Below are positions 4,035 to 25,542 of a stretch of 64,000 nucleotides of DNA, piece by piece. The notes beneath the pieces were generated by a model. That model worked only from the letters and a program-made list of their open reading frames with translations. It was not told the origin of the DNA and searched no databases. The position numbers and the translations under genes are program-made. The stretch lies in the NCBI RefSeq assembly GCF_006345805.1, contig NC_043013.1, positions 52,328,001 to 52,392,000 on the forward strand. Direction: 5' to 3'. The stretch is from Octopus sinensis. Lineage: Eukaryota. The first letter of the stretch is position 1. Every line of letters starts with the position of its first letter.

Positions 4035-4303
4035 AAAACAAAATAACCAAAATAACAAAAAAAAAACATTTTTGTCTTGTGTTTTTCTTTTAATATTTGA
4101 TATGATCCAAGATGGCAAGCTAGCAGAATCGGTAGGGCACCGGGCGACATGCTCCGTGGCATTTCATCTGTCTTTTCATTTTGAGTTCAAATTCTGCCAC
4201 AGTTGACTTTGCCTTTCACCATTTCAGGGTTCATGAAATAAATAACCCATACAGCACTGACCTCCACCCCTGAAATTACTGGCCTTGTCACAGAATTTGA
4301 AAC

Positions 4304-4357
<54 letters not shown>

Positions 4358-4469
4358 CATTATTGTTATTATTATTATTATCATCATTATTGTTATTATT
4401 ATTATTATTATCATTATTATTATTATTATATTATTATTATTATTATCATTGTTGTTATTATTATCATTA

Positions 4470-4512
<43 letters not shown>

Positions 4513-6311
4513 AGGTGGCAAGCTGGCAAAATCGTTAGCATTCTGGATGAAATGCTTAGTGGCATTTTGGCCATTGCTACGTTCTGAGTTCAAATTCTTC
4601 CGTGAGCGACTTTGCCTTTCATCCTTTCGGGGTCGACAAATTTAGTACCAGTTACACACTGGGGTTGATGTAATTGACTCACCCCCTCCCCCAAAATTGC
4701 TGCCCTTGTGGCAAAATTTGAAGCCATTATTATTATTAGTGTTAAGGCAATTAGCTAGCAGAATCGTTAGCATCCTGGATGAAACGCTTAGTGGTATTTC
4801 GCCAATCACTACATTCTGAGTTCAACTTCCACCAAGGTCAACTTTGCCTTTCATCCTTTCAGGGCTGATGAAATAAGTACAGGGGTCAATGTACCCGACT
4901 CATCCCCACCTGCTACAAGCTACCCTTGTGGCAAAAATTTGAAATTACTATTAAAATTTTTTGCTCTCTCTTCTCCATTCCAATACTTAAGTGGCCCAAA
5001 GTACTGGGAAGGATAAAAAGTGAAGCTGACCTTGCATGGGATTGAACTCAGGATGTATAAGGCAACAACAGCATTCAGCAACTTATTTAGTTCTACCTTC
5101 TACCAAGTCTAACAATCTATTACTACTACTACTAATAAATGGTTACTGGTTTAGTCACAGAGACAACAATTTCAAAAGGAGGGATTTAGTTGATTCCGTT
5201 GACCCCAGTATATGACTGGTACTTCATTCTATCAACTCTAAAAGGTGGGGTTAATCATGATGGGATTTGAATTCAGAATGTAAAAAAGTAGGAACAAATA
5301 CCACAAGGTATATATTTCTGATGCTCAAACAATTCTGCTAGCTCATAATAATAATAATAATAATATAATAATAATGATGATGATTATAATAATAATACTA
5401 TTTTAAAAGGATTGATGAAACTCTTCCCAAAGGTAAATAGACAATACAAAGAGCTCTTTGTAATAATAATAATAATAATAATAATAATCCCTCCTTATTT
5501 TAGCACAAGCCAGCAATTTTTATGGGTGGAGAAGTCAATTACATTGACCCCCCCCCACCAGTACTCAACTGGTACATATCTTATTGACCCTTACTGAATG
5601 AGATGTAAAGTCGACCTCAGCAGCATTTCAGCTCAAAACATAAACAGGTATGACCAAAAGAAATGGTGCCAACCATTCTGTCTAGCACAGTAAGAATTCT
5701 ACCAGCTTGCCATTATTTTAATACCATTTTATTCTTCCATGTTTCCATGGATTGGACAGATGTTCTCCAACACAACCCTTCACCATTTGAAGTTCAACCA
5801 CCTTGAGGGATACCTTTTTTTTCCACTTCTTCCCTGGTCCTTCTCCATGTCCCTCTCTTGCAGATTTCATCTGTTTAAATCACGTAGCTTTTCTTTTACC
5901 AAACAACCATGCTAAATGCTTAGAGGTATTTCTCCCTTTGATTCAGGGATGTATGCAGCCCCATCTCCTCCCTTAAGCACTACATCCGACATCACCCATT
6001 CCTAGTTTTTCTCTTTCAGCTCGTTTCAATATCACAGAGAATATATGATAAAAAAATAAATTCATTTTATCAAATCTATTAACAAAAATAATTCTATCCA
6101 TTTTACAAAAAATGGCAAACTGTGAGTGTAAAAGATTTTCATTTCTTTTGTTTGGTGAAGAGATACATTTTATGAGGTTGCACAAATCTGTATTTTAAAT
6201 TAAAAAACAAAAATTGCCCTGAAAATCCTGTGAAAACAAACCCCTGTCCCCAATCCCTTATTTGTAAGGACAATTAAAATTCATACCATTATATTTATCA
6301 TTCTTTAAATC

Positions 6312-6499
6312 CTATAAACGACTCTTGAGGCACTCTGCGTGCCCTACTAGGGATAGTGGAACAGTTCGATAAATCCATCTCTCTTTCGGATCAAGATGAT
6401 TCAGAAAATTACCAGACGAATGGATCTCATCCTTGGTGAAGGGTAAAAACAATTCTTCATACTGTTCCTCGTTTGGCTTTTCAGGGTAGAGGTAGTCAC
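6312..6499 (-). pseudogene. NUDT19: Orphan duplicate of NUDT19 terminal exon (intact acceptor, ORF, stop and PTS1)
   Basis: ttgcag|GTGAC acceptor. Encodes (G)DYLYPEKPNEEQYEELFLPFTKDEIHSSGNFLNHLDPKERWIYRTVPLSLVGHAECLKSRL*. It has 9 nt differences in 188 from the + strand exon, and no exon 1-2 is present on the - strand in this window. Confidence 0.8.
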
Positions 6500-9400
6500 C
6501 TGCAAGAATAAATTGTAACTGAAGACCTGAGTTCAAACACAACTAAAGTTTAGCTGGACTTCACCTTTTTTTGTTTTTTAATTAGTGACACCAGTTTTAA
6601 AGAAAGTGTTATTTTAAAACAAGAAATTGTTGCAGTGAAATATTGCAATTATTTTGATGTTGTGCAGTGGTACTGCAAAGAGATCATTGCAGTCTAGGGT
6701 ACGCAGGTTCAATCCTAGGGCATGATAGTGAAGACAGGATAATCATCTTATTAAAGTTGTCTAAATTCTAATGAAAGCCGTCAGTAGTCTGTGAGACAAC
6801 CAGTCCCTGTGTCTGTGTGTATAGATCATCATCATCATCATCATCATTTAACGTCCATTGTTCATGCTGGCATGGGTTGGACGGTTTGACCAGGGCTGGC
6901 AAGCTAGAAGGCTACACTAGACCCCAGTCTGCTTTGACCTGGTTCCTACAGCTGGATGCTCTTTCTAGTGCCAACCACTCTGAGAGTGTAATGGGTGCTC
7001 TTACGTGCCACTGGCATGGGTGCCATTTGCTTGACACCAGTATCTGCCACATCTGTGATTTTGCTCAGCTTGATGGGTCTTTTATCTCAAGCATGACATA
7101 ATGCCAAAGCTCTCAGTCATTGCCTCCATGAAGTTCAACAATCGAAAGGATCTTTTCATGTGCCACTAGCATAATCCTCTTTGCCTCTGTGAGGTGCAAT
7201 CCTCAAAAGGTGCTTTTTATGTGCTACTGGCATGGGTGCCAGTTATGCGACACCAGCACCAGCCTTCACTACGATTTCACTTGGCATCAGTTTTTCATGC
7301 TGGCATGGGTTGGACGGTCTGATAGGAATTGGTAATCTGGAGAGCTGCATCCAGTGTATATGGAGCTGTGTTGCAAATTACGTATAATTTGGCTGTTGTT
7401 AGTTTGTTTCTTAAGGAGGGACATGACTCAGAACACTGTTGCTGTACAAATTGATTGATCAGTCTTCATGCATTAAGCTCATTTGGCAGGTTGCAGTTGG
7501 GATTAATACCTATTTATTTATATATATATGTATACTCCAAGAACGTTAGGGGTTGTGGATCCAACCCATTAAGGGATAATATCCATCCAATGTACTGTTG
7601 GTAGAATACCCAATTATTAATACACAAGTGTTTTTCTATTGCATTGCAATTAACTTACCTATTGTATTAAATGGGTGAAGGTAAAGAGGTATTTTACCAT
7701 TAATTTATATCGCAAATAAGAAAATGGAGAACAATAGTTGGTTCATCAACCTTAGGACATTAAAATTGATAAGTTATTTATTTATTATAATGATAATTAT
7801 AATAATAACATACACACATATAGCATATTATTCAATGCATATAAAAATAAGAATACAAGTATTATTAAAAAACATGTTCCTCCATTTTCTTATTTGCTAT
7901 GTGTGTGTGTGTGTGTCTATAATAATCAATTAAGTAAACAGAAGATGGAATTGGTATAACTACTAATTTTGTATGACGATTATTTTGACCCATCCTGCAT
8001 CCACCCTTTATGGGTGAGGTGCTGTGCCTCATATTATGTTGCATCAATCTTGCAGTCTGGGTCACATCAAGTACATCCATACGTGAAGTGGTGTCTCGCT
8101 AAAGATCTTGATTCTGGGGCAGTCATGTTGTTACTTGCCCACTTCATTTAGGGAATATATACGTATTTTACACTAACTAACACTGCGGAATTCCAGAAGT
8201 AGATCCAAAGGAAATGTACCCCAATTGTGGATGACATCAGGTAGCCCAAACTGTAGCAGTGCTTTACTCAACACATCAGCATACTAATTGACATATACTC
8301 ATTAGCCTGAAATATTACATAGGAGTGGCTGTGTGGTAAGAAGCTTGCTTCCCAACCTTATAGTTCTGGGTTCAGTTCCACTGTGTGGAACCTTAGCAAG
8401 TGTCTTCTATTATAGCCTCAGGTCGACCAAAGATTTGTGAGTGGTTTTGGTAGATGGAAACTGAAAGAAGCCTATCATATATGTGTGTGTGTTTGTATGT
8501 ATAGTGTAGCACAATCAGTAAGTTGTCATAACGGGACTCAGATTTTCAAATGCTGGAGCTAAGGGCCACGATGCATTCTCATTGGCTATTATTGATTGTT
8601 GTAAACTATACATATAAATTCTTCTATTTATCTAATATCTAGGTCCTATTCTTTTGTTGTCATTCATTATTATTGTTATTATTATTATATATACTTATAT
8701 ATATATATGAAGACATATATATTTGTGTGTGTGTGTTCATCCCCCCACCATTGCTTGACAACTGATGTTGATGTGTTTACATCCCCATAACTTAGTGGTT
8801 CAGCAAATGAGACCAACAGAATAAGTCCCTGGCTTACAAAATATAAGTCCTGGTGTCGATTAGTTCGACTAATGGCAGTGCTCTAGCATGGTCGCAGTCA
8901 AATGACTGAAACAAGTAAAAGAATATATATTTCAAACAATTACAAAGATTATGGAGACTGGCACCGTTTCAAATTTCTCTACTAATTTTACAGTTGGTCA
9001 GCATAATTATTTGGTCATTATTGTAAGCAATTAATTTTGCTATTAGATCAACTGTAAAATTAAAAAGAAAAAATTGATGATATACCATTCTCCATATTCT
9101 ATATAACTGTTTGGAATCTACACTCCTGAAAAATTTCATAATCCGGAGAAGTGAACCCAGAGTTATCCATCAGAAAAATTATAGCATGATTGCTAACACT
9201 AAGCAATCTTTGATTCTTATCACTACTTGATGAGGTTAGCCGTAACCTGGAGTCTATCTCAGAACTACCATGGTACCCACCTAGATAACTTTATCCCTGT
9301 ATACTCACATAATCACTTATATGTGGATGTGTATAAAGTTATACACTTCTGCCAGCATGGAACATGAGTGTTATATGATTGTGTATATCTATCTATCTAT

Positions 9401-9627
9401 CTATATATATATATAAAGTGGAACAAACCACCTTTTATCAATACATATAATAGAAATATTAAATATAAAATAACAATAAATCTCTCTCTATATAAACGGC
9501 AGTTTGTATATAATAATTTTGAATTGATAAAAGGTGTTTTTTTTCTAATTTTTATATATATATTATATTTTGTGAAATTTGATTTAGTATTTCTAAATTG
9601 AATTTTTCCCTGTAAGTTTTCCCTCAA

Positions 9628-9687
<60 letters not shown>

Positions 9688-10633
9688 ACATAAAGGTGGC
9701 AGTTCTTGTTTACACATGGTTGTAGATATTTAAGAAAGGAAAATATGGTAAAAATGCACAGGAGGTTTGTATAATAAAATTTATGCTAATATTAAGATCA
9801 TAATGAAACAAAGACTTGTATTACAATATTATATAATAAACTAGGAGTACCAGTGACAGAAATGGTGTCCCCAAGATTTAGCAAAAATTCTCTCTCTATG
9901 GAAATCTGAGACCTTGGAAGTTTGATAAGCATAAGACACGAAACTGGTTCTGGTTCTCATAGTTTATATATATATAGAATCAACAGATGAGATTGAGAGA
10001 ATCTTAGATTAAAAATAACACTTAGTAATGCTCAAATGGTTTTATTTAAACACTGATAACTTTACTGAGGACCAAGTCTGCAGCTTAAAGAATGGCTACA
10101 AGGAGAATCCAGGTGAGCAGTGAGCAGGTATGGAGACAATGATTCAAATAAACAGATAAAAACTTAGGTTTTAATGTACAATATATGTATATATATACAT
10201 AAACATCGAAATAAATGGAAACAGTAGTTGTGATACCTGTGCCGGTGGCACGTAAAAAACACCATCCAAACGTGGCCGATGCCAGCGCCGCCTTGATTGG
10301 CTTGTGCTGGTAAAAAGCACCAACCAATTGTGGCCAATGCCAGCCTCCCCTGGCACCTGTGCCAGTGGCACGTAAAAAGCACCCACTACACTCATGGAGT
10401 GGTTGGCATTAGGAAGGGCATCCAGCTGTAGAAACTCTGCCAGATCAAGATTGGAGTCTGGTGCAGCCATCTGGTTCGCCAGCTCTCAGTCAAATCGTCC
10501 AACCCATGCTAGCATGGAAAGCAGACGTTAAACGATGATAATGATGATATATATAAATCTACACATATCTTTTTACACGTATATATATTTTTATACATTA
10601 AAATCCAAAGTTTTATCTATTCATTTGAATCAT

Positions 10634-10666
<33 letters not shown>

Positions 10667-11309
10667 ATCTATATATATATATATATGTATGTATGAATAT
10701 ATGCATACATATATATATAATTATTTTTTAAAAAATGAAGAAAAAAGACAAGAACAAACAGCAATACGAGGACGAGGTACATGCAAAGTATTAATAAATT
10801 GCTCAGGTAAGGAAAGAAAGGGTGTTTTACGTTTCGTGCAAAGCTCCTATTCAGAAACGGGAGACAGAGGAAAGCCCAAGAGAAAAGAAAGACAGAGGAA
10901 ATTAATCACCAGCAATCCACATGTAGCTACATTTTGGAATATATATGTGTATATATAAATAAGCATGTATAAAGTATAAGTGTATGTATAAAATACTGCA
11001 TATATAAGAGGTAAGTTACAGCGTTTAGACAGTACAATCTTCTTTCATCCAAGCAAGATATTTAATCACAGACAGAGCATAATGACTCAGCAAATAGTTC
11101 TTAATTACTAATTAAGTTTCAATTCATTTTTACCGAAGACCGTGATGTAAGGGGAGTAACTCTACACAACAAATGTAGTCCATTTGAAATGACAAATAAC
11201 AGGTAAACTTCATAGCATTAGTCATAGCTATGTATGTGTACGTATATAAAAATACATACATACATTCATGCACACACACACATATTTATATATGAATAAA
11301 TGCAATGTG

Positions 11310-11530
11310 CAGCAGAAAAACCTGCTTCAATGATGCGAGGTGTGGCAGAAAACCCTCCCACATTGATGTGAGGTGCGGCAGAAAAGCCTCCCTTTTACAT
11401 AGGGTCTTTGTTGGAAGGTGGGACAGAAACCCCTGCTTCATTGATGCAAGGTGCGGCATAAGAACCTCCCACATTGATGCAAGGTGAGGCAGAAAAACCT
11501 CCCACATTCATCCCAGGTGCAGCAGAAAAA
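11310..11530. repeat. 33-bp minisatellite, ~6-7 degenerate units
   Basis: Consensus approx. GCAGAAAAACCTCCCACATTGATGCAAGGTGCG in head-to-tail units with no spacers. Confidence 0.8.
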
Positions 11531-12380
11531 TGCTTTTGTTGGCCTGTGGCTCTAGCAGAAACACCTCCCCAAGGTTCTACGCAGTGGGACTGAGCCCGGA
11601 ACCATGTGGTTGGCAAGGAAACCTCTTACCGTACAGCCATGCCTGCGCCTATATCAACCTTTCTTCCAAACACCGATTTAATCTGATAATGAAGAATTTG
11701 TTTCATAATTTTCAAAATCGATTGAAATAAAGGAATTGTATTGCACTAGAAATATGGCAAGAAAGAAATAAGAATCGTTAGCATGCCGGACGAAATGCTG
11801 AGCTGTATTTCGTCTGTCTTTATGTTCTGAGTTCAAATTCCGCCGAGGTTGACTTTGCCTTTCATTCTTTCGGGGTTGATTAAATAGGTACCAGTTACAC
11901 ACTGAGGTCAATGTAATCGACTTAATCCATTTGTCTGTCCTTGTTTGTCCCCTCTGTGGTTAGCCCCTTGTGGGTAGTAAAGAAATAGAAATAGGTATTT
12001 CGTCAGCCGTTACGTTCTGAGTTCAAATTCCGCCGAGGTCGACTTACCCTTTCATCCTTTTGGGGTCGATAATTTAAGTACCAGTTACGTACTGAGGTCG
12101 ATCTAATCGACTGCCCCCCCCCACCAAATTTCGGGTTTTGTGCCTAGAGTAGAAACGAATATCACTAACTGTTCAAATTTATCCTTTCAAATTTTCCTTG
12201 TTAAAACAGAATTAGAAATTGAACCAATTCCGCCGTAGAATGATGTTTAAAAACCTATTTGTTGAATGGTCGGTTAATTTTGTGTATCTGGTGCTACGTA
12301 GGAACAGTCTATCTGTGAGAATCTGCTTTTACGGTCTCGTGTCTTGTTTTGTTCTTTGTTGCTTGTATAGTTTTCAGTTG

Positions 12381-12725
12381 TGGAGGCGCAATGGTTCAGT
12401 GGTTAGGGCAGCGGACACGCGGTCGTACGATCGAGGTTTCGATTTCCAGACCGGACGCTGTGAGTGTTTATTGAACGAAAACACCTAAAGCTCTACGAGG
12501 CTCCAGCAAGGGGCGAGGACGAACCTTGCTGAACCCTTTCACCTCAACTTTCTCTTACTCTGTAATTTCAAAGGGCCAGCCTTGTCACACTCTGTGTCAC
12601 GCTGAATCTCCCCGAAAATTACGTTAAGGCTACACGTATCTGTGGGTACACGTTAATTTCACGAGCAGGCTGTTCCGTCGATTGGATCAACTGGAACCCT
12701 CGTCGTCGTAACCGACGGAGTGACA
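12381..12725 (+). mobile_element. tRNA-derived SINE family C (GGAGGCGCAATGG..CAGTGGTTAGGGCAGCGGAC...), representative copy
   Basis: A-box TGGTTCAGTGG and B-box-like GGTTTCGATTTCC, then a shared body. Other approximate copies: 3085-3460, 18460-18705, 24805-24960(-), 29950-30260(-). Confidence 0.78.
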
Positions 12726-13375
12726 CGTCAGTTTCCAATTATGACCATGTATTATTTAAGGAATCAGAAATTTTCGGTAATTTGAACCCTCTCTCTCTCG
12801 CTCTCTTCCAAGATCCTAAACTTTATTCTTAAAGTTTTATCGTAAGACAATAACCGTAAACCTAATAATAGCCGAAATCCCAACTAAGAATACAATTAGA
12901 AGAAAATAATTTAATGGATTATAAATTGTATTCAAATTTTATTGAATACAACTAGAAAGACAAAAAGAAAAAATCAATCGCATCGTTAAGTATTCATTTC
13001 GAAATAGTTTCTCTGTCAGACGGTAAAGTCCGGAATCTTTGTTAAAGTGGTCATATCTTGGGTGTCACCGGTTGTAGATGTAAGGGAGGTAACTGTTAAA
13101 CCTTAACGACGTTTCGCATTCTTGAGGATTAAAGAGTAAAGGTTAAAGAAGAAGGATTAAAGATTAAAGAAAAAAGAAGACAACACCAGGCAAATGGCTT
13201 TACGAAGTCGCAACTAATATTTCTCTCCCAGTGGATTTTGATGTCGCATTCTGCAACATTTGTCATCGACTAACACACACACACACACACACACACATGT
13301 GTCCTAGTTTGAAATATTTTGTCAAACATTGATATCCGTCACTGCTAAGACAGGAACCAGGAGTTTATTCCACAA

Positions 13376-14212
13376 ATGGCAGCAACTGTTCTCCGTTGTT
13401 GGAAGGAATCTGCGGCCCTTATAATTGTGAGGCGGCTGAAACCGAAACAATGTTACAAAGAGGTGGCCGCGGTGCCACCGCCTCAAGAAAATACCCCGCG
13501 ACCACCCGAGACGAATTTCCAAGTGTTTATGGCAGAGAGAACTGCTGTCATATCCAATTTCCCCAAAGCTCACGTATTTCCAGGTGGAGCGGCCGAAGAG
13601 GCGGATTTCTCTGCTCAATGGTTGGATGTGCTGAGCATGGGTTCCCTTAAACAAGGTGAAGATCAAACACCCGAAGGTCAAATGGTGAATTTCTTTAAGA
13701 ACAATCGGAGAAAGAATTGTGTTGGTGATAATAACCAAGGGACCCCGATGTACCGGAGACAGAGGTTGCCGGAGTTTAGTGCAATACCCAGCGAAGTGGC
13801 CTTCCGAATCACAGCCATTCGAGAGGTATTCGAAGAAATCGGTGTCTTGTTTGCACGAAAAGCAGAAGAAAATAAAACAGACGAAGACAAAGAGGAATCT
13901 TTTATGCAAAACCACGACACAAGAAATGGACAAGTATTCAGGAGGCGGTGTATACCGAAAATATGTCACCTGCCACTTGATTTGTCGGAATTCTGGAGAC
14001 AAAGTGTTGTGGAGAACCCAGAAAACTTTTTATTCATGTGTAAAGAATTGAAGCTTGTTCCCGACATAACAGCCCTGTCCGAATGGTCCAACTGGTTGAC
14101 GCCAACCCACGCCACAAGTAAACGATTCGACACAGTGTTTTATATAACATTTCTTGATGAACACCAACATCCAAACATACGCTTAGATGGGATGGAATAC
14201 GTCGACTACAAG
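13376..14212 (+). CDS. NUDT19: NUDT19-like acyl-CoA diphosphatase exon 1 (279 codons, split Nudix box)
   Basis: ATG at 13376. Contains W..SAALI, FPGG....DFS, a long insertion, AIREVFEEIGVL, WSNWLTP and RFDTVFY, as in NUDT19. Donor AAG|gttagt at 14212/14213. Confidence 0.92.
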
Positions 14213-16304
14213 GTTAGTGAAAAATACTTTCATAATGGTGATTGTTTGTTCATAGAAATATTAAAAAAAAAAAAAAAAAAAAGAATGCGCTTGCGTGTAT
14301 CTAGGATGTCCGTGGGTGTTGCCCTTAAAATCTTGGCCTGCTAGTTTTCGTCCACTGTTTGATATTTCAAAGTCATTGTCCCTCCTCTTCACTCAAAAAT
14401 TTAGTAAACATATTATTCTACCAAAAAATATTTAATTCTTCAGTTTAATTAATATTGGATTGGTATAAAGACAAACAATGTGTGCGTGTGTGTGTGAAGA
14501 TACAATTTCGCTCGTTCGATCTACCGAATAATCTACTCTTGGAATTGGAGTATAGGTGGTCGAGTATTCCCCAGACACGTGTACCCTTAACGTAATTCTC
14601 AGGCAGGATTAGCGTGACTGCCTTGTTATGCAACAGATTGTCCTCATTTCGTTCTTTTCCAACCTTTGCCCTTCAGGGCCCACCCTCTCACCACCCATAC
14701 AGCATTGCAATTTGTACACGTGCATCTTACTCTGTTCTTCACTCAGAGAAATTATCTTATTGTCAGTTAAGGTAATAACTCCCTAAACTTATTCAACCCT
14801 TTTCTAATCCTGGGCCACTACACTTTCTATCTTTACACCCTCCCCAGCTGTTGATTAAGTCACTTACAGAAAAGAAACTACTTTTAAATTGCTACAAAAT
14901 CACTTCCCCTTAATGGTGTTGTGATGGATCACTACTCCACAGCTAAAATATTTATTCAGCATCAGCTTGTCTTCAAATCCACTACAATTCTTGGGCATCA
15001 ATAGATGCACCAGGCTACACTACATCAAGGTATCTACTAACTCCTGTCCTAAATAATGACCGACCCATTTCTCGGATGTTATCAGACTTCTTTCTTCTCT
15101 TCTACTTTCTTCTCTAAGTCAACACTAAGACATTGCAATTCTAAATTTTGGAATTTTTTCCTCTTAATCTTCCAGAGTCTCTGCTATAAATACTATGTCG
15201 TCCTTATAGATGAGCCCCCACGGGCAGTCTGTCTTAAACTACTACAAATTATTAAAGATGTCTTAAAGAATTTTCTTTGTCTTCTTCTTATCATTTGATA
15301 CATATCATCATCATCGTCGTTTAACATCTGATTTCCATGCTGGCATGGGTTGGACGATTTGACTGAGGTCTGGCAAACCAGATGGCTGCAACAGGCTCCA
15401 ATCTGATCTGGCTGGATGCCCTTCCTAACGCCATTGGCTTGGAGGCCAGCTTGTTGCTCTGGCCCCGATCTCACTGTATGGTTTTCTTAGCACTCCACTA
15501 GCATGGAGGCCAGTCATCGAATTTGATTTCGATATCGATTTCACTTGCCTCAACAAGTTTTCACAAGCAAGTATGTATACAAGTCACCAACTAGAAAAAG
15601 ACGCCAATGTCTAAAATCTACCTCAAGTTATCATTGTAGCGAGCAACAAGCTAGTCGTAAAAGGCAATGGTCATGATTGGTTAAAATTACTGCCCATATT
15701 AGAATTCTAAACTTTCATTAAAGAGAATTCTTTCATGAAATACGGTTCTTAGAATTCAGGTATGAGCAGTTTTAAAAACCCTGATTTTTGGGAAATTAAT
15801 CAGTTGGTTGTTACTAAACTCCACAACACTCACAATAGTGATGTTTGATTATCAATAGACTTCACGACACTTAGACTAGTATTCGTTGGTCGTAATTCTC
15901 TATGACAAATTGCCTTACTCCTAAATGTACTGTAAATATTAAATGTACATAAATAAACCAATGTAGTAAATATTTTCTCTTTCTTCACTTCTTTCCAACC
16001 TGTTAATGAAATTTATTTCTGCAATTATGAAACTGTTTTTATAGCGGTGAAAAAGAACACAAACTTATCTTCAACATACATGCACATTCAACATGTCCTT
16101 TCAAATGTATTGATATATATACTTTTCACTACGGCATTTATGTAGCTTGAGTTAGGATTTATGTTTAGTGATAGCACTTATAATTAAGTTATAAGTGATG
16201 GGTTTATCAATATAGATTCTTAAGAGATAAAATATATTTATTATCTATCTCAGTAGAAAGCATATAAATAAGACATTACAAAAGTGGTACCCAATCAGCC
16301 GTTG

Positions 16305-16784
16305 TATCACCACAAAGTATAAACACACATGCAAATAAATGAAACAGATTCATCAAGTGGTTCTTTTTCTATCATCAGTGTTATATAAACCAATCAATGC
16401 AGATAAATACAAACAAAATATACACCCATGAAACAGAATGGTTCCACAGCGCAAATACACTGTTTGTGCTTATATACAAAACAAAAATTCAAAATCTCGT
16501 TTCATTTATTTCAATCACATGTTAATAATATTTGGTTAATAATATTTGGTTAATAATATTTGGTTATTAACATGTGATTGAAATAAATGAAACGAGATTT
16601 TTGAATTCTTATTCTGTATACAGGCGCAGGAGTGGCTGTGTGGTAAGTAGCTTGTTTACCAACCACATGGTTCCGGGTTCAGTCCCACTGCGTGGCACCT
16701 TGGGCAAATGTCTTCTACTATAGCCTCGGGCCGACCAAAGCCTTGTGAGTGGATTTGGTAGACGGAAACTGAAAGAAGCCTGTC

Positions 16785-16823
<39 letters not shown>

Positions 16824-17255
16824 TGTGTGTGTTTGTGTGTCTGTGTTTGTCCTCCTAGCATTGCTTGACAACCGATGATGGTGTGTTTACGTCTCCGTTA
16901 CTTAGCAGTTCGGCAAAAGAGACCGATAGAATAAGTACTGGGCTTACAAAAGAATAAGTCCCGGGGTCGAGTTGCTCGATTAAAGGCGGTGCTCCAGCAT
17001 GGCCGCAGTCAAATGACTGAAACTAATAAAAGAGTATATAAGTTCAAACGGTGTATTTGTGCTGTGGAGCCGTTCTGCTTCATGGGTGTGTATTTTGTTT
17101 GTGTTGATATGCATTGATTGGGTTATATTACATTGATGACAGAAAAAGGGATTACCCCCTAATCTTGAAAGCAATTGATGTGTAATTGAACCATTTCATG
17201 AATCTGTTTCATTTATTTACACATGTTCAGCATGGGTTTATACTTTATGGTGATA
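16305..17255. repeat. Long foldback palindrome centred ~16552, interrupted by a SINE
   Basis: Central ~45-bp stem (16484-16545 vs 16565-16610). Outer arms 16305-16480 and 17035-17255 are reverse complements. Confidence 0.85.
16622..17035 (+). mobile_element. tRNA-derived SINE family A (TGGCTGTGTGGTAAG...GGTTCAGTCCCACTG...), representative copy
   Basis: A/B-box-like head with a non-tRNA body. Other approximate copies: 2330-2480(-), 8320-8480, 11540-11650(-), 18355-18450, 26580-26750, 28765-28925(-), 32890-33050, 34310-34435, 39955-40040(-), 45705-45850(-), 48180-48330(-), 52757-52915, 62150-62300(-). Confidence 0.8.
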
Positions 17256-17452
17256 TTTTAAGGTAGATTTTAGACATTGGCAACTTGTGTACGTATTCTG
17301 TTGCCCTTGATAGATATTTATAAATTGATTAATTTAACCTTAACTGGTTGATTGCATGCTAACTCCCTGATAAAATCTAATATAGATTTTATCCTTAATT
17401 TTAATATAATTTTGATATAATGTGTATCATCTTCTTTTATATTCCTGTCCAG

Positions 17453-17645
17453 TGGTTAACACCAATGGAATATTTCTCACAGAAACTTCATATTTTCCCT
17501 CCGCAATTATGGGAGATCTACCACCTGAACTCCTCCAGCTGGGAAGACCTTCACAATTCGGTCACCTCGATTCCCTATTTACAACCCAAGAGATTCTTAC
17601 CTGTGAAAATCAATTGCAAAGATGGGGTATTGGTTTTTTTACCAG
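17453..17645 (+). CDS. NUDT19: NUDT19-like exon 2
   Basis: Pyrimidine tract and ccag|TGG acceptor. Encodes WLTPMEYFSQKLHIFPPQLWEIYHL...VLVFLP(G). Donor CCAG|gtaat. Phase 0 start matches exon 1. Confidence 0.88.
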
Positions 17646-19254
17646 GTAATTTCTTTTTTTTTTTTTATATTTATATATTAGTTATTTTCCTGTTGAGAAC
17701 ATTTCTTCTTCTCATCTCAGTTCCTGGTTCACCCTTGGTTGCAACAATAAGGTTTCAGTATGACAGGATTTGGTTAGTTGCAGGGCTTCCTTGAGTTTCC
17801 ATACCATCTTCGGCATACCCTTCTTAACACCAACCACTCCACAGTGTGTACTGGGTGCTGTCTTTGCATCATTGGTAATACTGAGGTCACAAAGTCGCTT
17901 GCAATAGAGGAAAAGAGCAGGAAAATGAAAAAGATTTTAAAAAAGCCCCCTTGACAAAGTGGCAGGAGCGGGAGCAAGGCTTCATACCAGATGTTAAGAG
18001 ATTAAACTATGAGAGTAAGAAACACAGGTGTCTTGGTATAAGGGAGATACATGACTACCTGTGTTTTAGAAGATAAGATGGGAGCCAGAGCCAGCCCTCA
18101 AGGGGTACATGTGGTGGAATTAATTAGCTCTGTGCAAAAAAATGCTGCAATATTTTCAGTGGGTTGCACTCACCCCACACAATTGCTGACCTTGTGCTAA
18201 AATTTGAAACCAATGTTTTGAGGGTCATAGCACAACCTGTCACTGGTGCAGGAATATTCCATGTCAATACCGTTTTGTAAAGGTCTGCTGTAGACATTGT
18301 TATATAATCTGTCATCAGCTTTAGAAGATGTTTGTAAAACTCTTATTCATAATCACCCATGGGTGTGTGGTGAAGAAGCTCTCTTCCCAGCCATGTGGTT
18401 CCGGGTTTAGTCCCACTGTGTTGCACCTTGGGCGAGGGTCTTCAACAATATATATATATGGAGGCGCATGGCTTAGTGGTTAGGGTGTCAGCACTATGAT
18501 TGTTAGATTGTGGTTTCAGTTCCTGGACTGGGTGACACGTTGTGTTCTTGAGCAAAACACTTCATTTCACATTGCTCCAGTCCACTCAACTGGCAAAAAT
18601 GAGTAACACTGCGATGGACTGGCGTCCAGTCCAGCTGGGGACACATACGCCATAGAAACCAGGAAACCGGGCCCATGAGCCTGACTAGGCTTTAAAAGGG
18701 CGCATTTATTTTATATATATATATATATATATATAGAGTGAGAGAGAGAGAGAGATAGATTAGACAGGTATTCTCAGTACTGAATACCCTTCGTAATGCT
18801 TAAGAGATTTGAACTTGACTATGTAGAGGAGGAAATGTAAGGACAAGCAAGTTAGGTAAGTCGATTTACACAGAATATTAAACACATTTAATACAAAAAA
18901 TGTACATATATATACATATAAAAGAAGTCCGACTCACACAGAATAGCAATGATATCCGGAATTAAAAGGGTTGAGTAAGACTTTTATGAGCCCAACAGCT
19001 GTTTCTTGGGGCTTGGTGGTCCAAAATCATTCCATCTTTAAAATACATTTTGTCAATGTCTCAAATGTAAAATTCATCCCTGAAAATGGAGGCTGGTATT
19101 ATCCGATGATGAAATCAATCTACAATCATTATTTTGGATCACCAAAACCCCAGAAACAGCTATTTGATTTGTGAAACTCTTATTCAACTTCTTTACTCCC
19201 TCATATCATTTCTATTCTATGTAAACCGGGCTTTTATGTATATATATATATATA

Positions 19255-19485
19255 TTGGGATGGTACATAATTATTGCGGTTTTTTTCAACATTTTATTCC
19301 ACAAAAACAATAACAGCAATGTAACAAAAACATCTTTAAAGGATTATTCCGGAGCATATTCACCATCTACTTCAATTACTGCTTCCCATTTGCTTGGCAG
19401 ACGGTCAGACCATCATTTAAAGATTTTTTGTTAAATATTATTGTTTTTGTTGAAAAAAAGCTGCAATAATTATGCACCGACCCAA
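19255..19485. mobile_element. Tc1/mariner-type MITE
   Basis: TIR TTGGGATGGTACATAATTATTGC / GCAATAATTATGCACCGACCCAA, flanked by TA. Confidence 0.75.
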
Positions 19486-19549
19486 TACATATGTACATTG
19501 TTTTTATATCGACTTGCCTAGCTCGCGTCCTTACATTTATTCATATGTA

Positions 19550-20117
19550 TTAGGTTGTCCGGAAAGTTCATGCTGATTTTTAAAGGAAAGAAAAAAGTCA
19601 ATAAATACTTGCCATTACATTTTTAATCAACCAAATATGAACCATTTTGTTGCACAATGCGTCTCCATCTTTCCTTTAACTTGAAAATACCCTCTTCCCA
19701 GAATTGATATGGTTTCATGGCAAAGAATTCATCAAGGTATCTTTTTTTACGTCATTCAAGGAAGTGAAATTTTTACCATTAAGACTATTCTGCAGAGACC
19801 TGAATAAGTGGAAATCCAAAGGAGCAATATCTGGTGAATATGGAGGGTGGGGTAACACATCCCAGCCGAGCTGCAGCAATTTTTGTCTGTTTCCTAAAGT
19901 ATCAAGTGCCGAAAATGAACTTTCTTATCTTTCATTTTAAAGGGTTACATAATTAACACAGGTAATAGGAACATAAATCTTCTTCCGTGAAAAGATAGCT
20001 TAAACTGTGCTCTAAATGGAGGTGTAGTTAAATCCTATTTTATGGACTCAACCATGTTCTAAAATAAGTCGAAAGGTAAGCTACTATAAATCGGCACAAA
20101 CTTTCCGGACAACCCAA
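19550..20117 (-). mobile_element. Internally deleted mariner element
   Basis: TIR TTAGGTTGTCCGGAAAGTT / AACTTTCCGGACAACCCAA with TA flanks. The - strand encodes the mariner C-terminus LGWDVLPHPPYSPDIAPLDFHLFRSLQNSL. Confidence 0.88.
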
Positions 20118-20882
20118 TATATATATGTGTATGTCTGTGACCTGCTGTTGGTCATTTCAAATGGACCGACAATGTTAGTTCTATAGAGTTATTCCCTTTA
20201 CATCACTGTCTTTGAATGTGTCAAACCGTCAATGCTGTTCTTTCGTGATAGCAACGATGATTCTGAACTCCCTGGTGTATGTGTTTGTGTGTGTGTATAC
20301 GTAAATGACCGTCAATGGCTATCGTATTTAATGTCATAATAAAAGACCTTAATTCCTAATTAGGTTGTGTCTGTTTTACTAGACGAATTGTTTTATATGT
20401 AATAATTATTATTATTACGGTGAAAATGAATTGATGAAACTTAATTAGTAATTAAGAACTATTTGCTGAGTCATTATGCTCTGTCTGTGATTAAATATCT
20501 TGCTTGGATGAAAGAAGATTGTACTGTCTAAACGCTGTAACTTACCTCTTATATATACAATGTTTTATACATACACTTATACTTTATACATGCTTATTTA
20601 TATATATACACACATATATATATATTCCAAAATGTAGCTACATGTGGATTGCTGGCGATTAATTTCCTCTGTCTTTCTTTTCTCTTGGGCTTTCCTCCGT
20701 CTCCTCTTTCCGAAGAAGAGTTTTGCTCGAAACATAAACACCATTTCTTTCCTTCCCTGAGTGTCTTATTAATTCTTTGCATCTACCATGTCTTCGTATT
20801 GTTTGTTTCTTGTCTTTTTTCTCCATTTTTTATTAATTATATATATATGCATATATACATACATACATATATATATATATAT

Positions 20883-20914
<32 letters not shown>

Positions 20915-21009
20915 GAGACGGAGAGAATGATTCAAATAAATAGATAAAACCTTAGATTTTAATGTATAAAAAATATATATACATGTAAAAAATGTGTAGA
21001 TATATATTA

Positions 21010-21310
21010 TCATCATCATCGTTTAACGTCCGTTTTCCATGCTGGCATGGTTTGGACGGTTCAACTGGGGTCTGGGAAGCCAGGAGGCTGTACCAGGCTC
21101 CAGTCTGATCTGGCAGTGTTTCTACAGCTGGATGCCCTTCCTAATGCCAACCACTCCGAGAGTGTAGTGGTTGCTTTTTACGTGCCACCAGCACGGGAGT
21201 CAGTCAAGGTGGTGCTTGCATTAGCCACATTCGGATGGTGCTTTTTATGTGCCACTGACACGAGGAGCCAGTCAGTTGGTGCTGGCATCAGCCACGACTA
21301 CAATTTCCAT
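21010..21310 (+). mobile_element. Interspersed repeat family D ((CAT)n-CGTTTAACGTCC...CATGCTGGCATGG), representative copy
   Basis: Other approximate copies: 6830-7000, 10250-10550(-), 15300-15550, 21990-22150(-). Confidence 0.7.
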
Positions 21311-22477
21311 TTGATTGTGGTTTGATTTGATTTTGATATTGATGTACTTGACTAAATAGGTTGATGTACTTGACTCAAGCACAGCATGTCGCCCAATGAT
21401 CCAGAGGTACTATGCTGATGTGTTGAGTAAAGCACTGCTACAGTTTGGGCTACCTGATGTTATCCATAGTTGGGGTACATTTCCTTTGGATCTACTTCAG
21501 GAATTGCGCAGTGTTACGTAGTGTAAAATACGTATATATTCCCTAAATGAAGTGGGCAAGTAACAACATGACTGCTCCAGAATCAAGATCTTTAGCGAGA
21601 CACCACTTTACATATGAATGTACTTGATGTGACCCAGACTGCAAGATTCCTATCAGACCGTCTGATCCATGCCAGCATGGAAAACGGATGCCAAGTGAAA
21701 TCGTAGTCATGCCTGGTGCTGGTGTCACATAACTGGCACCCATGCCAGTAGCACATAAAAAGCACCTTTTGAGGATTGCATCTCACAGAGGCAAAGTGGA
21801 TGGTACTAGGGGCACATGAAAAGATCCTTTCGATTGTTGAAAGTCATGGAGGCAATGACCGAGACCTTTGGCACTATGTCATCCATGGGAAGAAGACCCA
21901 TCAAGCTGAGCAAAATCACAGATGTGGCAGATACTGGTGTCAAGCAAATGGCACCTGTGCCAGTGGCGCATAAAAGCACCCATTACACTCTCAGAGTTGT
22001 TGGCACTAGAAAGGGCATCCAGCTGTAGGAACCAGGTCAAAGCAGACTGGGGACTAGTGCAGCCTTCCAGCTTGCCAGCCCTGGTCAAACCGTCCAACCC
22101 ATGCCAGCATGAACAATGGACGTTAAATGATGATGATGATGATGATGATGATCTATACACACAGACACAGGGACTGGTTGTCTCACAGACTACTGACGGC
22201 TTTCATTAGAATTTAGACAACTTTAATAAGATGATTATCCTGTCTTCACTATCATGCCCTAGGATTGACCCTGTGTACCCTAGACTGCAATGATCTCTTT
22301 GCAGTACCACTGCACAACATCAAAATAATTGCAATATTTCACTGCAACAATTTCTTGTTTTAAAATAACACTTTCTTTAAAACTGGTGTCACTAATTAAA
22401 AAACAAAAAAAGGTGAAGTCCAGCTAAACTTTAGTTGTGTTTGAACTCAGGTCTTCAGTTACAATTTATTCTTGCAG

Positions 22478-22665
22478 GTGACTACCTCTACCCTGAGAAG
22501 CCAAACGAAGAAGAGTATGAAGAATTGTTTTTACCTTTCACCAGGGATGAGATCCGTTCGTCTGGTAATTTTCTGAATCATCTTGATCCGAAAGAGAACT
22601 GGATTTATCGAACTGTTCCACTATCCCTAGTAGGGCACGCAGAGTGCCTCACGAGTCGTTTATAG
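22478..22665 (+). CDS. NUDT19: NUDT19-like exon 3 (terminal; C-terminal PTS1 -SRL)
   Basis: ttgcag|GT acceptor restores LPGDYLYPE (cf. LPGDELY in mammalian NUDT19). Ends TSRL-TAG. Total CDS is 837+193+188=1218 nt (405 aa). Confidence 0.88.
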
Positions 22666-23243
22666 AATTTAAAGAATGATAAATATAATGGTATGAATTT
22701 TAATTGTCCTTACAAATAAGGGATTGGGGACAGGGGTTTGTTTTCACAGGATTTTCAGGGCAATTTTTGTTTTTTAATTTAAAATACAGATTTGTGCAAC
22801 CTCATAAAATGTATCTCTTCACCAAACAAAAGAAATGAAAATCTTTTACACTCACAGTTTGACATTTTTTGTGAAATGGATAGAATTATTTTTGTTAATA
22901 GATTTGATAAAATGAATTTATTTTTTTATTATATTTTCTCTGTGATATTGAAACGAGCTGAAAGAGAAAAACTAGGAATGGGTGATGTCGGATGTAGTGC
23001 TTAAGGGAGGAGATGGGGCTGCATACATCCCTGAATCAAAGGGAGAAATACCTCTAAGCATTTCGCATGGTTGTTTGGTAAAAGAAAAGCTACGTGATTT
23101 AAACAGATGAAATCTGCAAGAGAGGGACATGGAGAGGGACCAGGAAAGAAGTGGAAAAAGAAGGTATCCCTCAAGGTGGTTGAACTTCAAATGGTGAAGG
23201 GTTGTGTTGGAGAACATCTGTCCAATCCATGTAAACATGGAAG

Positions 23244-23260
23244 AATAAAATGGTATTAAA
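23244..23260 (+). terminator. Candidate polyadenylation signals for NUDT19
   Basis: AATAAA (23244-23249) followed by ATTAAA (23255-23260), ~580 nt after the stop. Position only; the background is AT-rich. Confidence 0.25.
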
Positions 23261-23922
23261 ATAATGGCAAGCTAGCAGAATTCTTACTGTACTAGACAGA
23301 ATGGTTGGCACCATTTTGCTTTTGGTCATACCTGATTATGTTCTGAGCTGAAATGCTGCTGAGGTCGACTTTACCTCTCATTCAATAAGGGTCAATAAGA
23401 TATGTACAAGTTGAGTACTGGAGGGGGGGGGGGGTCAATGTAATCAACTTCTCCACCCATAAAAATTGCTGGCTTGTGCTAAAATAAGGAGGGATTATTA
23501 TTATTATTATTATTATTATTATGAGCTGGCAGAATTGTTTGAGCATCAGAAATATATACCTTGTGGTATTTGTTCCTACGTTTTACATTCTGAATTCAAA
23601 TCCCATCACGATTAACCTCACTTTTTAGAGTTGATAGAATGAAGTACCAGTCATATACTGGGGTCAACGGAATCAACTAAATCCCTCCTTTTGAAATTGT
23701 TGTCTCTGTGACTAAACCAGAAACCATTTATTATTATTATTAGTAGTAGTAGTAATAGATTGTTAGACGTTGGTAGAGGGTAGAACTAAATAAGTTGCTG
23801 AATGTTGTTGTAGCCTTATACATCCTGAGTTCAAACCCAGAATTTGAACTCAAAATGTAGCAATGGGCGAAATACCGCTAAGCGTTTCATCCAACATGCT
23901 AACGATTCTGCCAGCTTGTCAC

Positions 23923-23958
<36 letters not shown>

Positions 23959-24069
23959 TAATAATAATAATGGTTTCAAATTCTGTGACAAGGCCAGTAA
24001 TTTCAGGGGTGGAGGTCAGTGCTGTATGGGTTATTTATTTCATGAACCCTGAAATGGTGAAAGACAAAG

Positions 24070-24522
24070 TCAACTGTGGCAGAATTTGAACTCAAAATGA
24101 AAAGACAGATGAAAGGCCACGGAGCATGTCGCCCGGTGCCCTACCGATTCTGCTAGCTTGCCATCTTGGATCATATCAAATATTAAAAGAAAAACACAAG
24201 ACAAAAATGTTTTTTTTTTGTTATTTTGGTTATTTTGTTTTTCATATTTTTTTTTTTTGAAATTATTCAAATATTTTCTTCCATCACTGCTCAACTTTTC
24301 ACGGAGTCTTTTCTGGTTGTTGGCCAACTCCTGTCCATGGAGAATCCATGTAATGTTGCCATCACAAAGGATCCATGGATGACAGAGTACGTCAACAGCT
24401 GTGTAACGCCGTCTTCGGTCGACCACTAGAAGATGTCGAATGAGACCTTTAGCATCTGCAAATGTTCAAAGAGAAACCATTCATTTTTAGAACCCTTTTC
24501 ACCTGTCTGAGGAAGGAACAGC

Positions 24523-24557
<35 letters not shown>

Positions 24558-25542
24558 GCTATTGTCCACACATTGTTCGTTCCACCAACAAACTACAATA
24601 CTAACACGTTCAAATCTACTCCCTGTGTCCCCTCCACTTCCTGTTACTACCACAGCTTCTCCATCACCCTTGTCCAAACTTGCCGGATGTTTCAAGCCTC
24701 TTTCCATCTACTGTGTATTGTTTCTGGAACCATGTGTTAATGTAGCCAATCCTTTCTCCCCAATCCTGCCACCCACTGGAACTCAATCAGCCTCACCAGT
24801 CGTGGCACTCCATTGGTTACGACCACGAGGGTTCCAGTTGATCCGATCAACAGAACAGCCTGCTTGTGAAATTAGCATGTAAGTGGCTGAGCACTCCACA
24901 GACACGTGTACTCTTAATATAGTTCTTGGGGAGATTCAGCATGACACAGAGTGTGACAAGGCTGTGTGTAATGTGGAACGTATATACATATATATATATA
25001 TATATGCATACACATATACATATGTGTGTGCGCATATAATTTTCCTTTTTATCATATTTTATTCATCAGCTCCTCTAAATATTGTATGTATCTATCAACA
25101 GATGTATGTGTATATATGTATAAACACACACCTGCATGTGTTTGTGTATAAATAGATGTATGTGTGTGTTTAAGTAGATGTATATATTTGTATAAATACA
25201 TACTTTGTGTGTGCATGTATGTATAAACACATGCCTGTGTGTAAATGTGTGCTCACACACACACACACACACACGTATTTGTAAATTGTTAAGCATGTGT
25301 CACATCAGTGTGTATTAAATGCAAACAACAATTCCACCCTGTCGTCCCCACCCCTTCATCCACAACCACCACCACCACCACCCTCATCCCATATAAGGGC
25401 ATTACTGACCTTCTTGTGTTAGGATCTCTGGTGCCACATATGTTGGTGTGCCACACACCGTATAAATGTCTTCTGTTATTTCCATAGCCAAACCAAAGTC
25501 TGCCAACTTCAGCTTCAAGAAACCACCTTTGTTCCAGTAAAC
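24070..25542 (-). pseudogene. DCLK3: Partial inverted DCLK3 copy: exon A' (25410-25542) and exon C' (24455 downward); exon B deleted, 5' exons absent
   Basis: Both exons keep their splice sites. A 1-nt loss in the A-run near 24247-24258 removes the normal stop and extends the frame to 24070. No GYGLEVDMW exon lies between them. Confidence 0.88.

What the first reader, a model, noticed from the sequence alone, without database searches (positions are those of the whole stretch)
6312..22665. Candidate DNA flip-switch: invertible NUDT19 upstream region and exons 1-2 between two intact alternative terminal exons
Seen: exons 1-2 and upstream DNA lie in the core. An intact exon 3 sits on each arm in mirror orientation (22478-22665 +, 6312-6499 -). 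Both have the same phase-1 acceptor, an open frame, a stop and the -SRL peroxisomal signal, and differ at 5 residues (E/Q, R/K, R/H, N/R, T/K at -4). Inference: recombination between the arms would flip the core and splice exons 1-2 onto the other exon 3, giving two NUDT19 C-termini chosen by DNA orientation (polymorphic or somatic). The residue just upstream of SRL differs (T vs K), and basic residues there are known to modulate PTS1 import efficiency.
Basis: partly seen in the sequence, partly recalled or inferred. Interest (0 to 1): 0.85.

Follow-up and report, generated by a model that had tools for sequence, protein, structure and literature searches.

The report
Octopus NUDT19 inversion scar, not switch
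The mirror-image copies of the last NUDT19 exon are real, but they are most likely the leftover of an old small chromosomal inversion in the common-octopus lineage that duplicated its breakpoint region, and nothing here shows a working DNA switch.

Summary
The window is Octopus sinensis chromosome DNA (CM016875.1). NUDT19 exons 1-2 (13376-14212, 17453-17645, +) lie in a 9.3-kb core between inverted arms (about 527-11135 and 20418-27230). Each arm carries an open exon 3 ending in -SRL, and the two copies differ at 5 residues.

The switch reading is not supported. Each arm also carries 3' exons of a neighbouring DCLK-like kinase gene, tail-to-tail with NUDT19 exon 3. In the outgroup Argonauta hians the two genes are single-copy and convergent. 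So the left arm keeps the ancestral layout, the core has been inverted, and the right exon 3 (the annotated one) is the duplicate now in use. The left exon 3 is the orphaned original.

O. vulgaris, an independent assembly, has the same arms, junctions and core orientation. Its left arm has lost exon 3 through a 252-bp microhomology deletion. The redundant DCLK copies in the right arm are decaying too. Intactness of the left exon is expected by chance (P about 0.55-0.63), and pN/pS of 0.55 does not differ from neutral. No recombinase is present.

This matches inversions with duplicated breakpoints, as described in Drosophila. Patchy arm identity suggests past gene conversion, so a segregating inversion in O. 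sinensis is not excluded.

The parts
527..11135 (.). Left arm of the inverted duplication. It keeps the ancestral tail-to-tail layout of DCLK 3' exons and NUDT19 exon 3. About 3.8 kb of it has no right-arm counterpart.
1504..1647 (+). DCLK-like kinase exon A (DFG...APE segment), functional copy. Limits are from tblastn.
   Evidence: annotated 985-aa DCX+Pkinase gene
2572..2742 (+). DCLK-like exon B. It exists only in the left arm. Its right-arm counterpart is deleted in both species.
3849..4034 (+). DCLK-like last coding exon with its stop codon. The annotated gene ends at 4034.
6312..6499 (-). Left NUDT19 exon 3 (...KSRL*). It is the orphaned original terminal exon, still open in O. sinensis. 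In O. vulgaris it is removed by a 252-bp deletion equivalent to window 6264-6515.
11136..20417 (.). Unique core, inverted relative to the ancestral arrangement. It holds the NUDT19 upstream DNA, exons 1-2 and the 5' part of intron 2.
13376..14212 (+). NUDT19 exon 1 coding part (Nudix domain), followed by a GTTAGT donor.
17453..17645 (+). NUDT19 exon 2. It ends in phase 1 and is followed by a GTAATT donor.
20418..27230 (.). Right arm, the duplicated copy. It is continuous with NUDT19 intron 2 on its left.
22478..22665 (+). Right NUDT19 exon 3 (...TSRL*), the copy used in the annotated protein.
24244..24426 (-). Redundant copy of the DCLK last exon. It has 2 aa changes plus a 1-nt deletion in an A-run that removes the stop codon in O. 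sinensis. The O. vulgaris copy is intact.
25408..25551 (-). Redundant copy of DCLK exon A. It has 1 aa change and keeps its splice sites.

Best explanation
The structure is the scar of a small evolutionary inversion with a duplicated breakpoint region.

Ancestral state: a DCLK-like kinase gene and NUDT19 lay tail-to-tail (convergent).

The event: in the lineage leading to O. sinensis and O. vulgaris, a segment was turned round. It held the NUDT19 promoter, exons 1-2 and part of intron 2. One breakpoint region ran from a DCLK intron to NUDT19 intron 2. It covered the last DCLK exons, the intergenic DNA and NUDT19 exon 3, and it ended up on both sides of the inverted segment in mirror orientation (A-B-C-E became A-B-C'-B'-E).

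Consequence: both genes survived. DCLK uses the left arm. NUDT19 uses the core plus the right arm.

Redundant copies are now neutral relics decaying at different speeds:
- the left NUDT19 exon 3;
- the right DCLK exons.

Shown here: the net inversion, the duplication, its age relative to the species split, and the loss of the left exon in O. vulgaris.

Inferred: the molecular route (staggered breaks, inverted duplication followed by homologous recombination, or fold-back duplication plus deletion), later gene conversion between the arms, and the non-use of the left exon in O. sinensis.
For: 1. Each arm holds NUDT19 exon 3 and DCLK exons A and C tail-to-tail. Exon B exists only on the left.
2. 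The annotated 985-aa DCX+Pkinase gene runs on the + strand and ends at window 4034, inside the left arm.
3. In Argonauta hians, NUDT19 (+) is followed 1.4 kb later by the DCLK orthologue on the - strand. Exons C, B and A are present, at 72% and 88% identity for the two compared (C and B). Each exon is single-copy and no inverted repeat surrounds NUDT19.
4. O. vulgaris is collinear with window 4082-63786 in the same orientation and has the same junctions.
5. Four-way site patterns: 180 sites group left with left and right with right, against 5 and 4 for the alternatives. The duplication therefore predates the species split, and no exchange has been fixed since.
6. The O. vulgaris left arm lacks the acceptor, exon 3 and 48 nt of 3' sequence, through a deletion between TTACAA microhomologies.
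7. Neutral expectation: P(still open) is 0.55-0.63 for 7-9 random substitutions. pN/pS is 0.55, Fisher p = 0.41. 14% of equally sized windows in the same tier have at least 9 mismatches.
8. The right copy of the DCLK last exon has a frameshift that removes its stop codon.
9. No recombinase domain was found in arm or core ORFs.
10. The same pattern, inverted duplicates of unique genic sequence at inversion ends and often from one breakpoint only, is documented for 17 of 29 Drosophila inversions (PMC1885836).
Against: - Polarity rests on one outgroup plus the internal logic of the arms. O. bimaculoides DNA could not be fetched.
- The arms are much longer (7-10 kb) than the Drosophila breakpoint duplications (at most 1.9 kb), which strains the simple staggered-nick version.
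- Arm divergence falls in two tiers: 12% in the proximal tier and about 2% around exon 3. A second process is needed to explain this, probably gene conversion. That also means the arms do recombine.
- Only one haplotype per species was seen, so a segregating opposite orientation in O. sinensis is not excluded.
- No transcript data could be searched.
Confidence: 0.8

Rival explanations
1. Active or polymorphic flip-switch. Homologous recombination between the arms still inverts the core in O. sinensis populations or tissues. NUDT19 is then made with either the TSRL or the KSRL tail, and both exon copies are kept for that purpose.
For: - Both exon 3 copies are open, with identical acceptors.
- The arms share identical tracts of 277, 222 and 195 bp.
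- Their mosaic identity (0-3% patches among 12-18% patches) suggests past gene conversion.
- The other orientation existed ancestrally.
- Comparable recombination-driven flip/flop regions exist in yeasts (PMC9731477, PMC5720833).
Against: - The orientation is the same in both assemblies.
- There is no swapped block since the species split: 161 sites group left with left against 1 swap site in the proximal tier.
- The left exon is deleted in the sister species.
- There is no sign of selection on the left exon.
- The left arm evolves about 5 times faster than the right.
- No recombinase is present.
- No protein or contig with the KSRL form is on record.
Confidence: 0.07
2. No inversion step as such. 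A head-to-head (fold-back) duplication copied all of NUDT19 plus the DCLK 3' end. The 5' half of the original NUDT19 copy was then deleted, leaving the same A-B-C'-B'-E structure.
For: - The final structure is identical to that of an inversion with a duplicated breakpoint.
- Long palindromes are known to lose their centres (own knowledge).
- Arms of 7-10 kb are easier to obtain this way than by staggered nicks.
Against: - No remnant of a second exon 1 or exon 2 exists anywhere in the window or in the O. vulgaris locus.
- It needs two events where one suffices.
- It cannot be told apart from the best explanation with the present data.
- It leads to the same conclusion about the left exon.
Confidence: 0.15
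3. Assembly artefact. The inverted arm is a mis-joined haplotig or a chimeric long read, and there is only one exon 3 in the real genome.
For: - The O. sinensis assembly has a raised duplicated-BUSCO fraction, 5.2% (PMC10700109).
- The O. vulgaris locus itself shows one suspicious local fold-back.
Against: - The same arms, indels and junctions occur in two assemblies made with different technologies from different species.
- The arms differ by 2-18% and by kb-sized indels. Orthologous copies group together at 180 sites.
Confidence: 0.02

Closest known systems
Inversions with inverted duplications at their breakpoints (staggered-break model; Drosophila melanogaster group, Ranz et al. 2007, PMC1885836)
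   Same: - Ancestrally single-copy, genic, non-repetitive sequence from a breakpoint region is present in mirror orientation at both ends of a segment that is inverted relative to an outgroup.
[quoted passage not shown]
- The redundant copies decay by substitutions and small deletions.
   Different: - The arms here are 7-10 kb, against at most about 1.9 kb of aligned sequence in D. yakuba.
- The inverted segment is only 9.3 kb.
- Both breakpoints of the duplicated region lie inside genes (a DCLK intron and NUDT19 intron 2), so the duplication is what keeps both genes whole.
- The arms show later patchy homogenisation.
Recurrent (toggling) inversions between inverted segmental duplications in humans (bioRxiv 10.1101/2021.12.20.472354) and the Saccharomyces chromosome XIV flip/flop region (PMC9731477)
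   Same: - Paralogous inverted arms flank a unique segment.
- The arms are kept partly alike, apparently by gene conversion.
- Homologous recombination between them would invert the segment.
   Different: - In those cases both orientations are observed in populations. Here only one orientation is seen.
- The longest identical tract here is 277 bp.
Regulated flip/flop mating-type switching in Ogataea polymorpha (PMC5720833)
   Same: A eukaryotic DNA segment between inverted repeats whose orientation decides which gene product is made.
   Different: - The yeast inversion is induced, reversible, observed in both states and under a defined regulatory pathway, and both outputs are conserved.
- None of these properties is shown here, and one output is lost in the sister species.
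Bacterial and phage invertible segments that swap protein C-termini (phage Mu G segment with Gin; R64 shufflon). Own knowledge, not tested here.
   Different: - Those systems use a dedicated site-specific recombinase and short crossover sites.
- No such gene is in the arms or core.
- Joining here would be by splicing.
Human IDS gene and its partial inverted pseudogene copy (Hunter syndrome inversions). Own knowledge, not tested here.
   Same: A partial copy of a gene's exons lies nearby in inverted orientation. Recombination between gene and copy inverts the intervening DNA and re-pairs exons.
   Different: In the human case the result is a broken gene and disease. Here the fixed arrangement is the functional one.

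Membership tests
Inversion with breakpoint-associated inverted duplication | The segment is inverted relative to an outgroup. | tested here: met
   In Argonauta, NUDT19 and DCLK are convergent. In the window, the NUDT19 5' part points the same way as DCLK. The arm content independently requires an ancestral convergent layout.
Inversion with breakpoint-associated inverted duplication | Mirror copies of ancestrally unique, non-repetitive sequence lie at both ends of the inverted segment. | tested here: met
   The arms contain exons of two genes. They match only each other within the window.
Inversion with breakpoint-associated inverted duplication | The outgroup carries the duplicated region once. 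| tested here: met
   In the 22.8-kb Argonauta locus, the ORF lists show one NUDT19 exon 3 and one set of DCLK exons, and no flanking inverted repeat is found. Only one outgroup was available.
Inversion with breakpoint-associated inverted duplication | One copy is continuous with the outer flank and the other with the inverted segment. | tested here: met
   The left arm continues the annotated DCLK gene. The right arm continues NUDT19 intron 2. The same junctions are found in O. vulgaris.
Programmed invertible DNA switch | Inverted repeats flank the invertible segment. | tested here: met
Programmed invertible DNA switch | Both orientations coexist in a population or clone. | not testable with these tools
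   Only one haplotype per species was available, and both have the same orientation. No read data could be searched.
Programmed invertible DNA switch | A dedicated recombinase or a regulated break is present. | tested here: not met
   No Pfam hit in any arm or core ORF other than NUDT19. Transposon genes occur only at 34-58 kb.
Programmed invertible DNA switch | Both alternative outputs are conserved. | tested here: not met
   The left exon 3 is deleted in O. vulgaris. pN/pS does not differ from neutral.
NUDT19 (peroxisomal acyl-CoA diphosphatase, Nudix family) | Nudix domain and orthology to named NUDT19 proteins. | tested here: met
   PF00293 scores 25.3 bits, above its cut-off of 21.1. The best hits across molluscs and vertebrates are named NUDT19.
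NUDT19 (peroxisomal acyl-CoA diphosphatase, Nudix family) | C-terminal PTS1 tripeptide. | tested here: met
   Both copies end in -SRL. The Argonauta and sea-slug (Plakobranchus) orthologues end in -SKL. Import itself was not tested.
Recombination-prone inverted segmental duplication pair | Long, highly identical inverted arms with signs of exchange between them. | tested here: inconclusive
   The distal tier is about 2% diverged with identical tracts up to 277 bp, set in a mosaic with 12-18% patches. In the 22051-24300 tiers, 5 concerted and 3 swap sites stand against 19 orthologous sites.

The most novel reading that the evidence does not exclude
In O. sinensis the left exon 3 is still usable and the arms still recombine. 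Both core orientations may therefore segregate in the population through recurrent homologous recombination. Individuals would then make NUDT19 with either a TSRL or a KSRL peroxisomal tail. That would be an animal gene whose C-terminus is set by a small inversion polymorphism.
Probability: 0.07. Interest if true: 0.6.

Novelty: new member of a known kind. Interest (0 to 1): 0.3.

Why it matters
This is a clean, base-level example from a cephalopod of how a small inversion can cut through two genes and leave both working, because the breakpoint region was duplicated. It also catches the redundant exon copies at different stages of decay in two sister species:
- the DCLK exon B copy is gone in both species;
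- the NUDT19 exon 3 copy is gone in O. vulgaris only;
- the copy of the DCLK last exon is frameshifted in O. sinensis only.

It extends the breakpoint-duplication pattern known from flies to much longer arms in a mollusc. It also gives annotators a caution. An open, spliceable mirror exon is not evidence of use. The O. vulgaris gene model at this locus is chimeric.

Tried and rejected
1. Accelerated divergence of exon 3. Nine of 188 nt differ in the exon, against 7 of 600 in the nearest flanks (Fisher p = 0.005). This looked like diversifying selection or an unconverted island. A sliding-window control showed that 14% of equal-sized windows in the same tier reach 9 mismatches. Synonymous sites are as affected as the rest. 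Dropped.

2. Polarising the five amino-acid changes with O. bimaculoides and O. vulgaris. Two are derived on the right copy, two on the left, and one is ambiguous. This does not show which copy is constrained.

3. Looking for the KSRL form or either exon-3 ORF in public assemblies and transcript-derived proteins. Nothing is on record. The collection seems to hold no O. sinensis or O. vulgaris read assemblies, so this absence says little.

4. Fetching the O. bimaculoides locus through its protein. It is not on record.

5. Argonauta locus in scripts. The locus file never appeared in the script sandbox. The comparison was done with the ORF listing, protein comparison and the repeat finder instead.

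6. Right flank against Argonauta. I did not compare the window's right flank with the DNA upstream of NUDT19 in Argonauta. No conserved gene is visible in either stretch.

7. Assembly artefact. Rejected because of the second, independent assembly.

8. tRNA genes. A scan of positions 1-30000 found none.


Full report
**What is there**

The window equals CM016875.1:52,328,001-52,392,000 of the Octopus sinensis assembly GCA_006345805.1.

- NUDT19 gene structure: exon 1 (13376-14212), exon 2 (17453-17645) and the right-hand exon 3 (22478-22665), all on the + strand, splice in phase. Together they give a 405-aa protein identical to XP_029646972.1, 'nucleoside diphosphate-linked moiety X motif 19'. 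It has a Nudix domain above the Pfam cut-off.
- The second exon 3: a copy lies at 6312-6499 on the - strand. It has the same acceptor and phase and is open to a stop after -SRL. It differs from the right copy at 9 nt. Three are synonymous and the rest give E/Q, R/K, R/H, N/R and T/K.
- The arms: the two exons sit in inverted arms, about 527-11135 and 20418-27230. The arms form a collinear series of blocks at 84-99% identity, interrupted by kb-sized indels. They flank a unique 9.3-kb core.

**It is not an artefact**

The O. vulgaris chromosome assembly was made from ONT reads, independently of the PacBio O. sinensis assembly (PMC10700109). It is collinear with window 4082-63786. It has the same arms, the same arm/core junctions and the same core orientation.

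**What else the arms contain**

The annotated upstream gene encodes 985 aa with DCX and protein-kinase domains, so it is a DCLK-like kinase. It runs on the + strand and ends at window 4034, inside the left arm.

| DCLK exon | Left arm (+) | Right arm (-) |
|---|---|---|
| A | 1504-1647 | 25551-25408 (copy) |
| B | 2572-2742 | absent in both species |
| C (last) | 3849-4034 | 24426-24244 (copy) |

Each arm therefore carries the 3' end of DCLK and NUDT19 exon 3 tail-to-tail.

**Polarity**

A single ancestral copy of such an arm requires two convergent genes. The DCLK 5' exons must lie on one side, and NUDT19 exons 1-2 must lie on the other side on the opposite strand.

The outgroup shows exactly this. 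In Argonauta hians:
- NUDT19 (+) has the same three-exon structure and stops at L003:12812.
- The DCLK orthologue follows on the - strand, with its last exon at 14468-14238, then exon B, exon A and the large DCX exon. Exons C and B are 72% and 88% identical to the octopus exons.
- Each exon occurs once, and no inverted repeat surrounds NUDT19.

In O. sinensis, the left arm next to the DCLK body keeps this ancestral layout. The core is turned round, and the right arm supplies the exon 3 that is now used.

In symbols, A-B-C-E became A-B-C'-B'-E. The left exon 3 is therefore the original terminal exon, now orphaned. The right exon 3 is the copy.

**Age and later history**

In a four-way alignment of the arms of both species:
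- 180 informative sites group left with left and right with right.
- 5 sites group by species.
- 4 sites show the swapped pattern.

So the event predates the species split, dated at about 2.5 My (PMC10700109). No exchange of arm segments has been fixed since then.

Divergence between the arms falls in two tiers:
- The part next to the core (right-arm 20418-22050) is 12% diverged, with 161 fixed left/right differences.
- The stretch 22051-23830, which holds exon 3, is 2.2% diverged, with only 7 fixed differences.

Further out, patches of 0-3% alternate with patches of 12-28%.

Both genes needed the whole arm from the moment of the inversion. The simplest reading is therefore an old event, very roughly 9-15 My by these rates (inference), followed by patchy gene conversion shortly before the species split. 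That the arms have recombined is thus inferred, not shown.

The longest identical tracts today are 277, 222 and 195 bp.

**Is the left exon maintained?**

Several lines say no.

1. In O. vulgaris a 252-bp deletion between TTACAA microhomologies removes the polypyrimidine tract, the acceptor, all of exon 3 and 48 nt beyond it.
2. With 7-9 random substitutions the exon stays open in 55-63% of simulations.
3. pN/pS between the copies is 0.55 and does not differ from 1 (Fisher p = 0.41).
4. The exon's 9 mismatches are matched or exceeded by 14% of equal-sized windows in the same tier.
5. Since the species split, the left arm has accumulated about five times as many lineage-specific substitutions as the right arm: 22 and 25 against 3 and 4, and 22 and 22 against 1 and 9.
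6. The right-arm DCLK copies serve as an internal control. They cannot be used, because exon B and all upstream exons are missing on that strand. Yet exon A differs by one residue and keeps its splice sites. Exon C has two changes plus a 1-nt deletion that removes the stop in O. sinensis, and it is fully open in O. vulgaris.

Short exons at this divergence are expected to look intact.

**Is there switch machinery or switch behaviour?**

- No ORF in the arms or core has a recombinase or any other Pfam domain apart from NUDT19.
- Transposon genes lie only at 34-58 kb.
- Both species have the same orientation.
- No protein or contig with the KSRL form is on record. The collections seem to lack octopus read assemblies, so this is weak evidence.

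**Mechanism**

The structure is what the staggered-break model predicts: an inversion flanked by inverted duplicates of ancestrally unique, often genic sequence, frequently from one breakpoint only. Ranz et al. found this at 17 of 29 Drosophila inversions (PMC1885836).

The arms here are several-fold longer than in flies. This favours one of three routes:
- the chromatid double-strand-break version of the model;
- a replication-based event;
- an inverted duplication followed by homologous recombination.

A fold-back duplication of the whole gene, followed by loss of the original 5' half, gives the same end product. No remnant of a second exon 1 or 2 exists. These routes cannot be separated with the present data.

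**Verdict**

The 'flip' did happen, once, in evolution. But the feature is a known kind of inversion scar and not a demonstrated switch.

What remains open is whether O. sinensis, which still has a usable left exon and recombining arms, carries the ancestral orientation as a polymorphism. I put that at about 7%.

Noticed in passing
window 54717-59284 (ORFs 54804-57281, 57245-57679 and 57676-58512, - strand): A non-LTR retrotransposon with reverse-transcriptase and endonuclease domains. The whole 4.6-kb stretch is absent from the orthologous O. vulgaris position (L001 about 52330). It is therefore a species-specific or polymorphic insertion.
   Followed up: partly
L001 about 14579-16110 (O. vulgaris NUDT19 intron 2; equivalent to window 17991-18735): O. 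vulgaris has a local fold-back. A ~760-bp stretch is followed, across an (AT)n run, by its own inverted copy at 98.3% identity. O. sinensis lacks it. It is either a real small palindromic duplication or a long-read assembly artefact.
   Followed up: partly
L001 10001-52298 (O. vulgaris protein CAI9734922.1, 509 aa): The O. vulgaris gene model is chimeric. It follows NUDT19 up to ...DEIRSS. It then uses a GTAAT inside exon 3 as a donor and continues into about 130 residues from DNA up to 30 kb downstream.
   Followed up: partly
window 4082-11135 vs 20418-24300 and their O. vulgaris counterparts: Since the species split, the left arm has gained about five times more lineage-specific substitutions than the right arm in both species. 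Orthologous mismatch is about 3.3% on the left against 0.6-1.1% on the right, and about 1.3% in the core. The cause is unknown. It could be constraint on the right arm, a local rate difference, or mis-polishing of duplicated sequence.
   Followed up: partly
window 2156-2476, 16618-17039, 26578-26875, 28558-28931, 32885-33296, 39660-40047, 45478-45863, 47906-48322, 53150-53430: A dispersed repeat family of about 300-420 bp occurs in both orientations at 68-86% identity to one another. It is probably a SINE-like element. One copy lies in each arm at non-homologous places and one lies in the core.
   Followed up: no
window 42554-43195, 40330-40872, 34790-35167: Remnants of DNA transposons and an integrase: a mariner-type transposase DDE part (E = 1e-23), a Tc5-type DNA-binding domain just below the Pfam cut-off, and an integrase core fragment below the cut-off.
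   Followed up: partly
window 28166-28472 and 37613-38072; also L003 4622-6021: Long microsatellite-like arrays that read as (YLSI)n in translation. The two window arrays are 83-90% identical to each other, and similar arrays lie upstream of NUDT19 in Argonauta.
   Followed up: no
window 22598-22599: The N residue of the functional O. sinensis exon 3 (AAC) arose by two adjacent base changes from AGA (R). AGA is kept in the O. sinensis left copy and the O. vulgaris right copy, and O. bimaculoides has R at this residue. It is a lineage-specific double substitution in the copy that is in use.
   Followed up: partly
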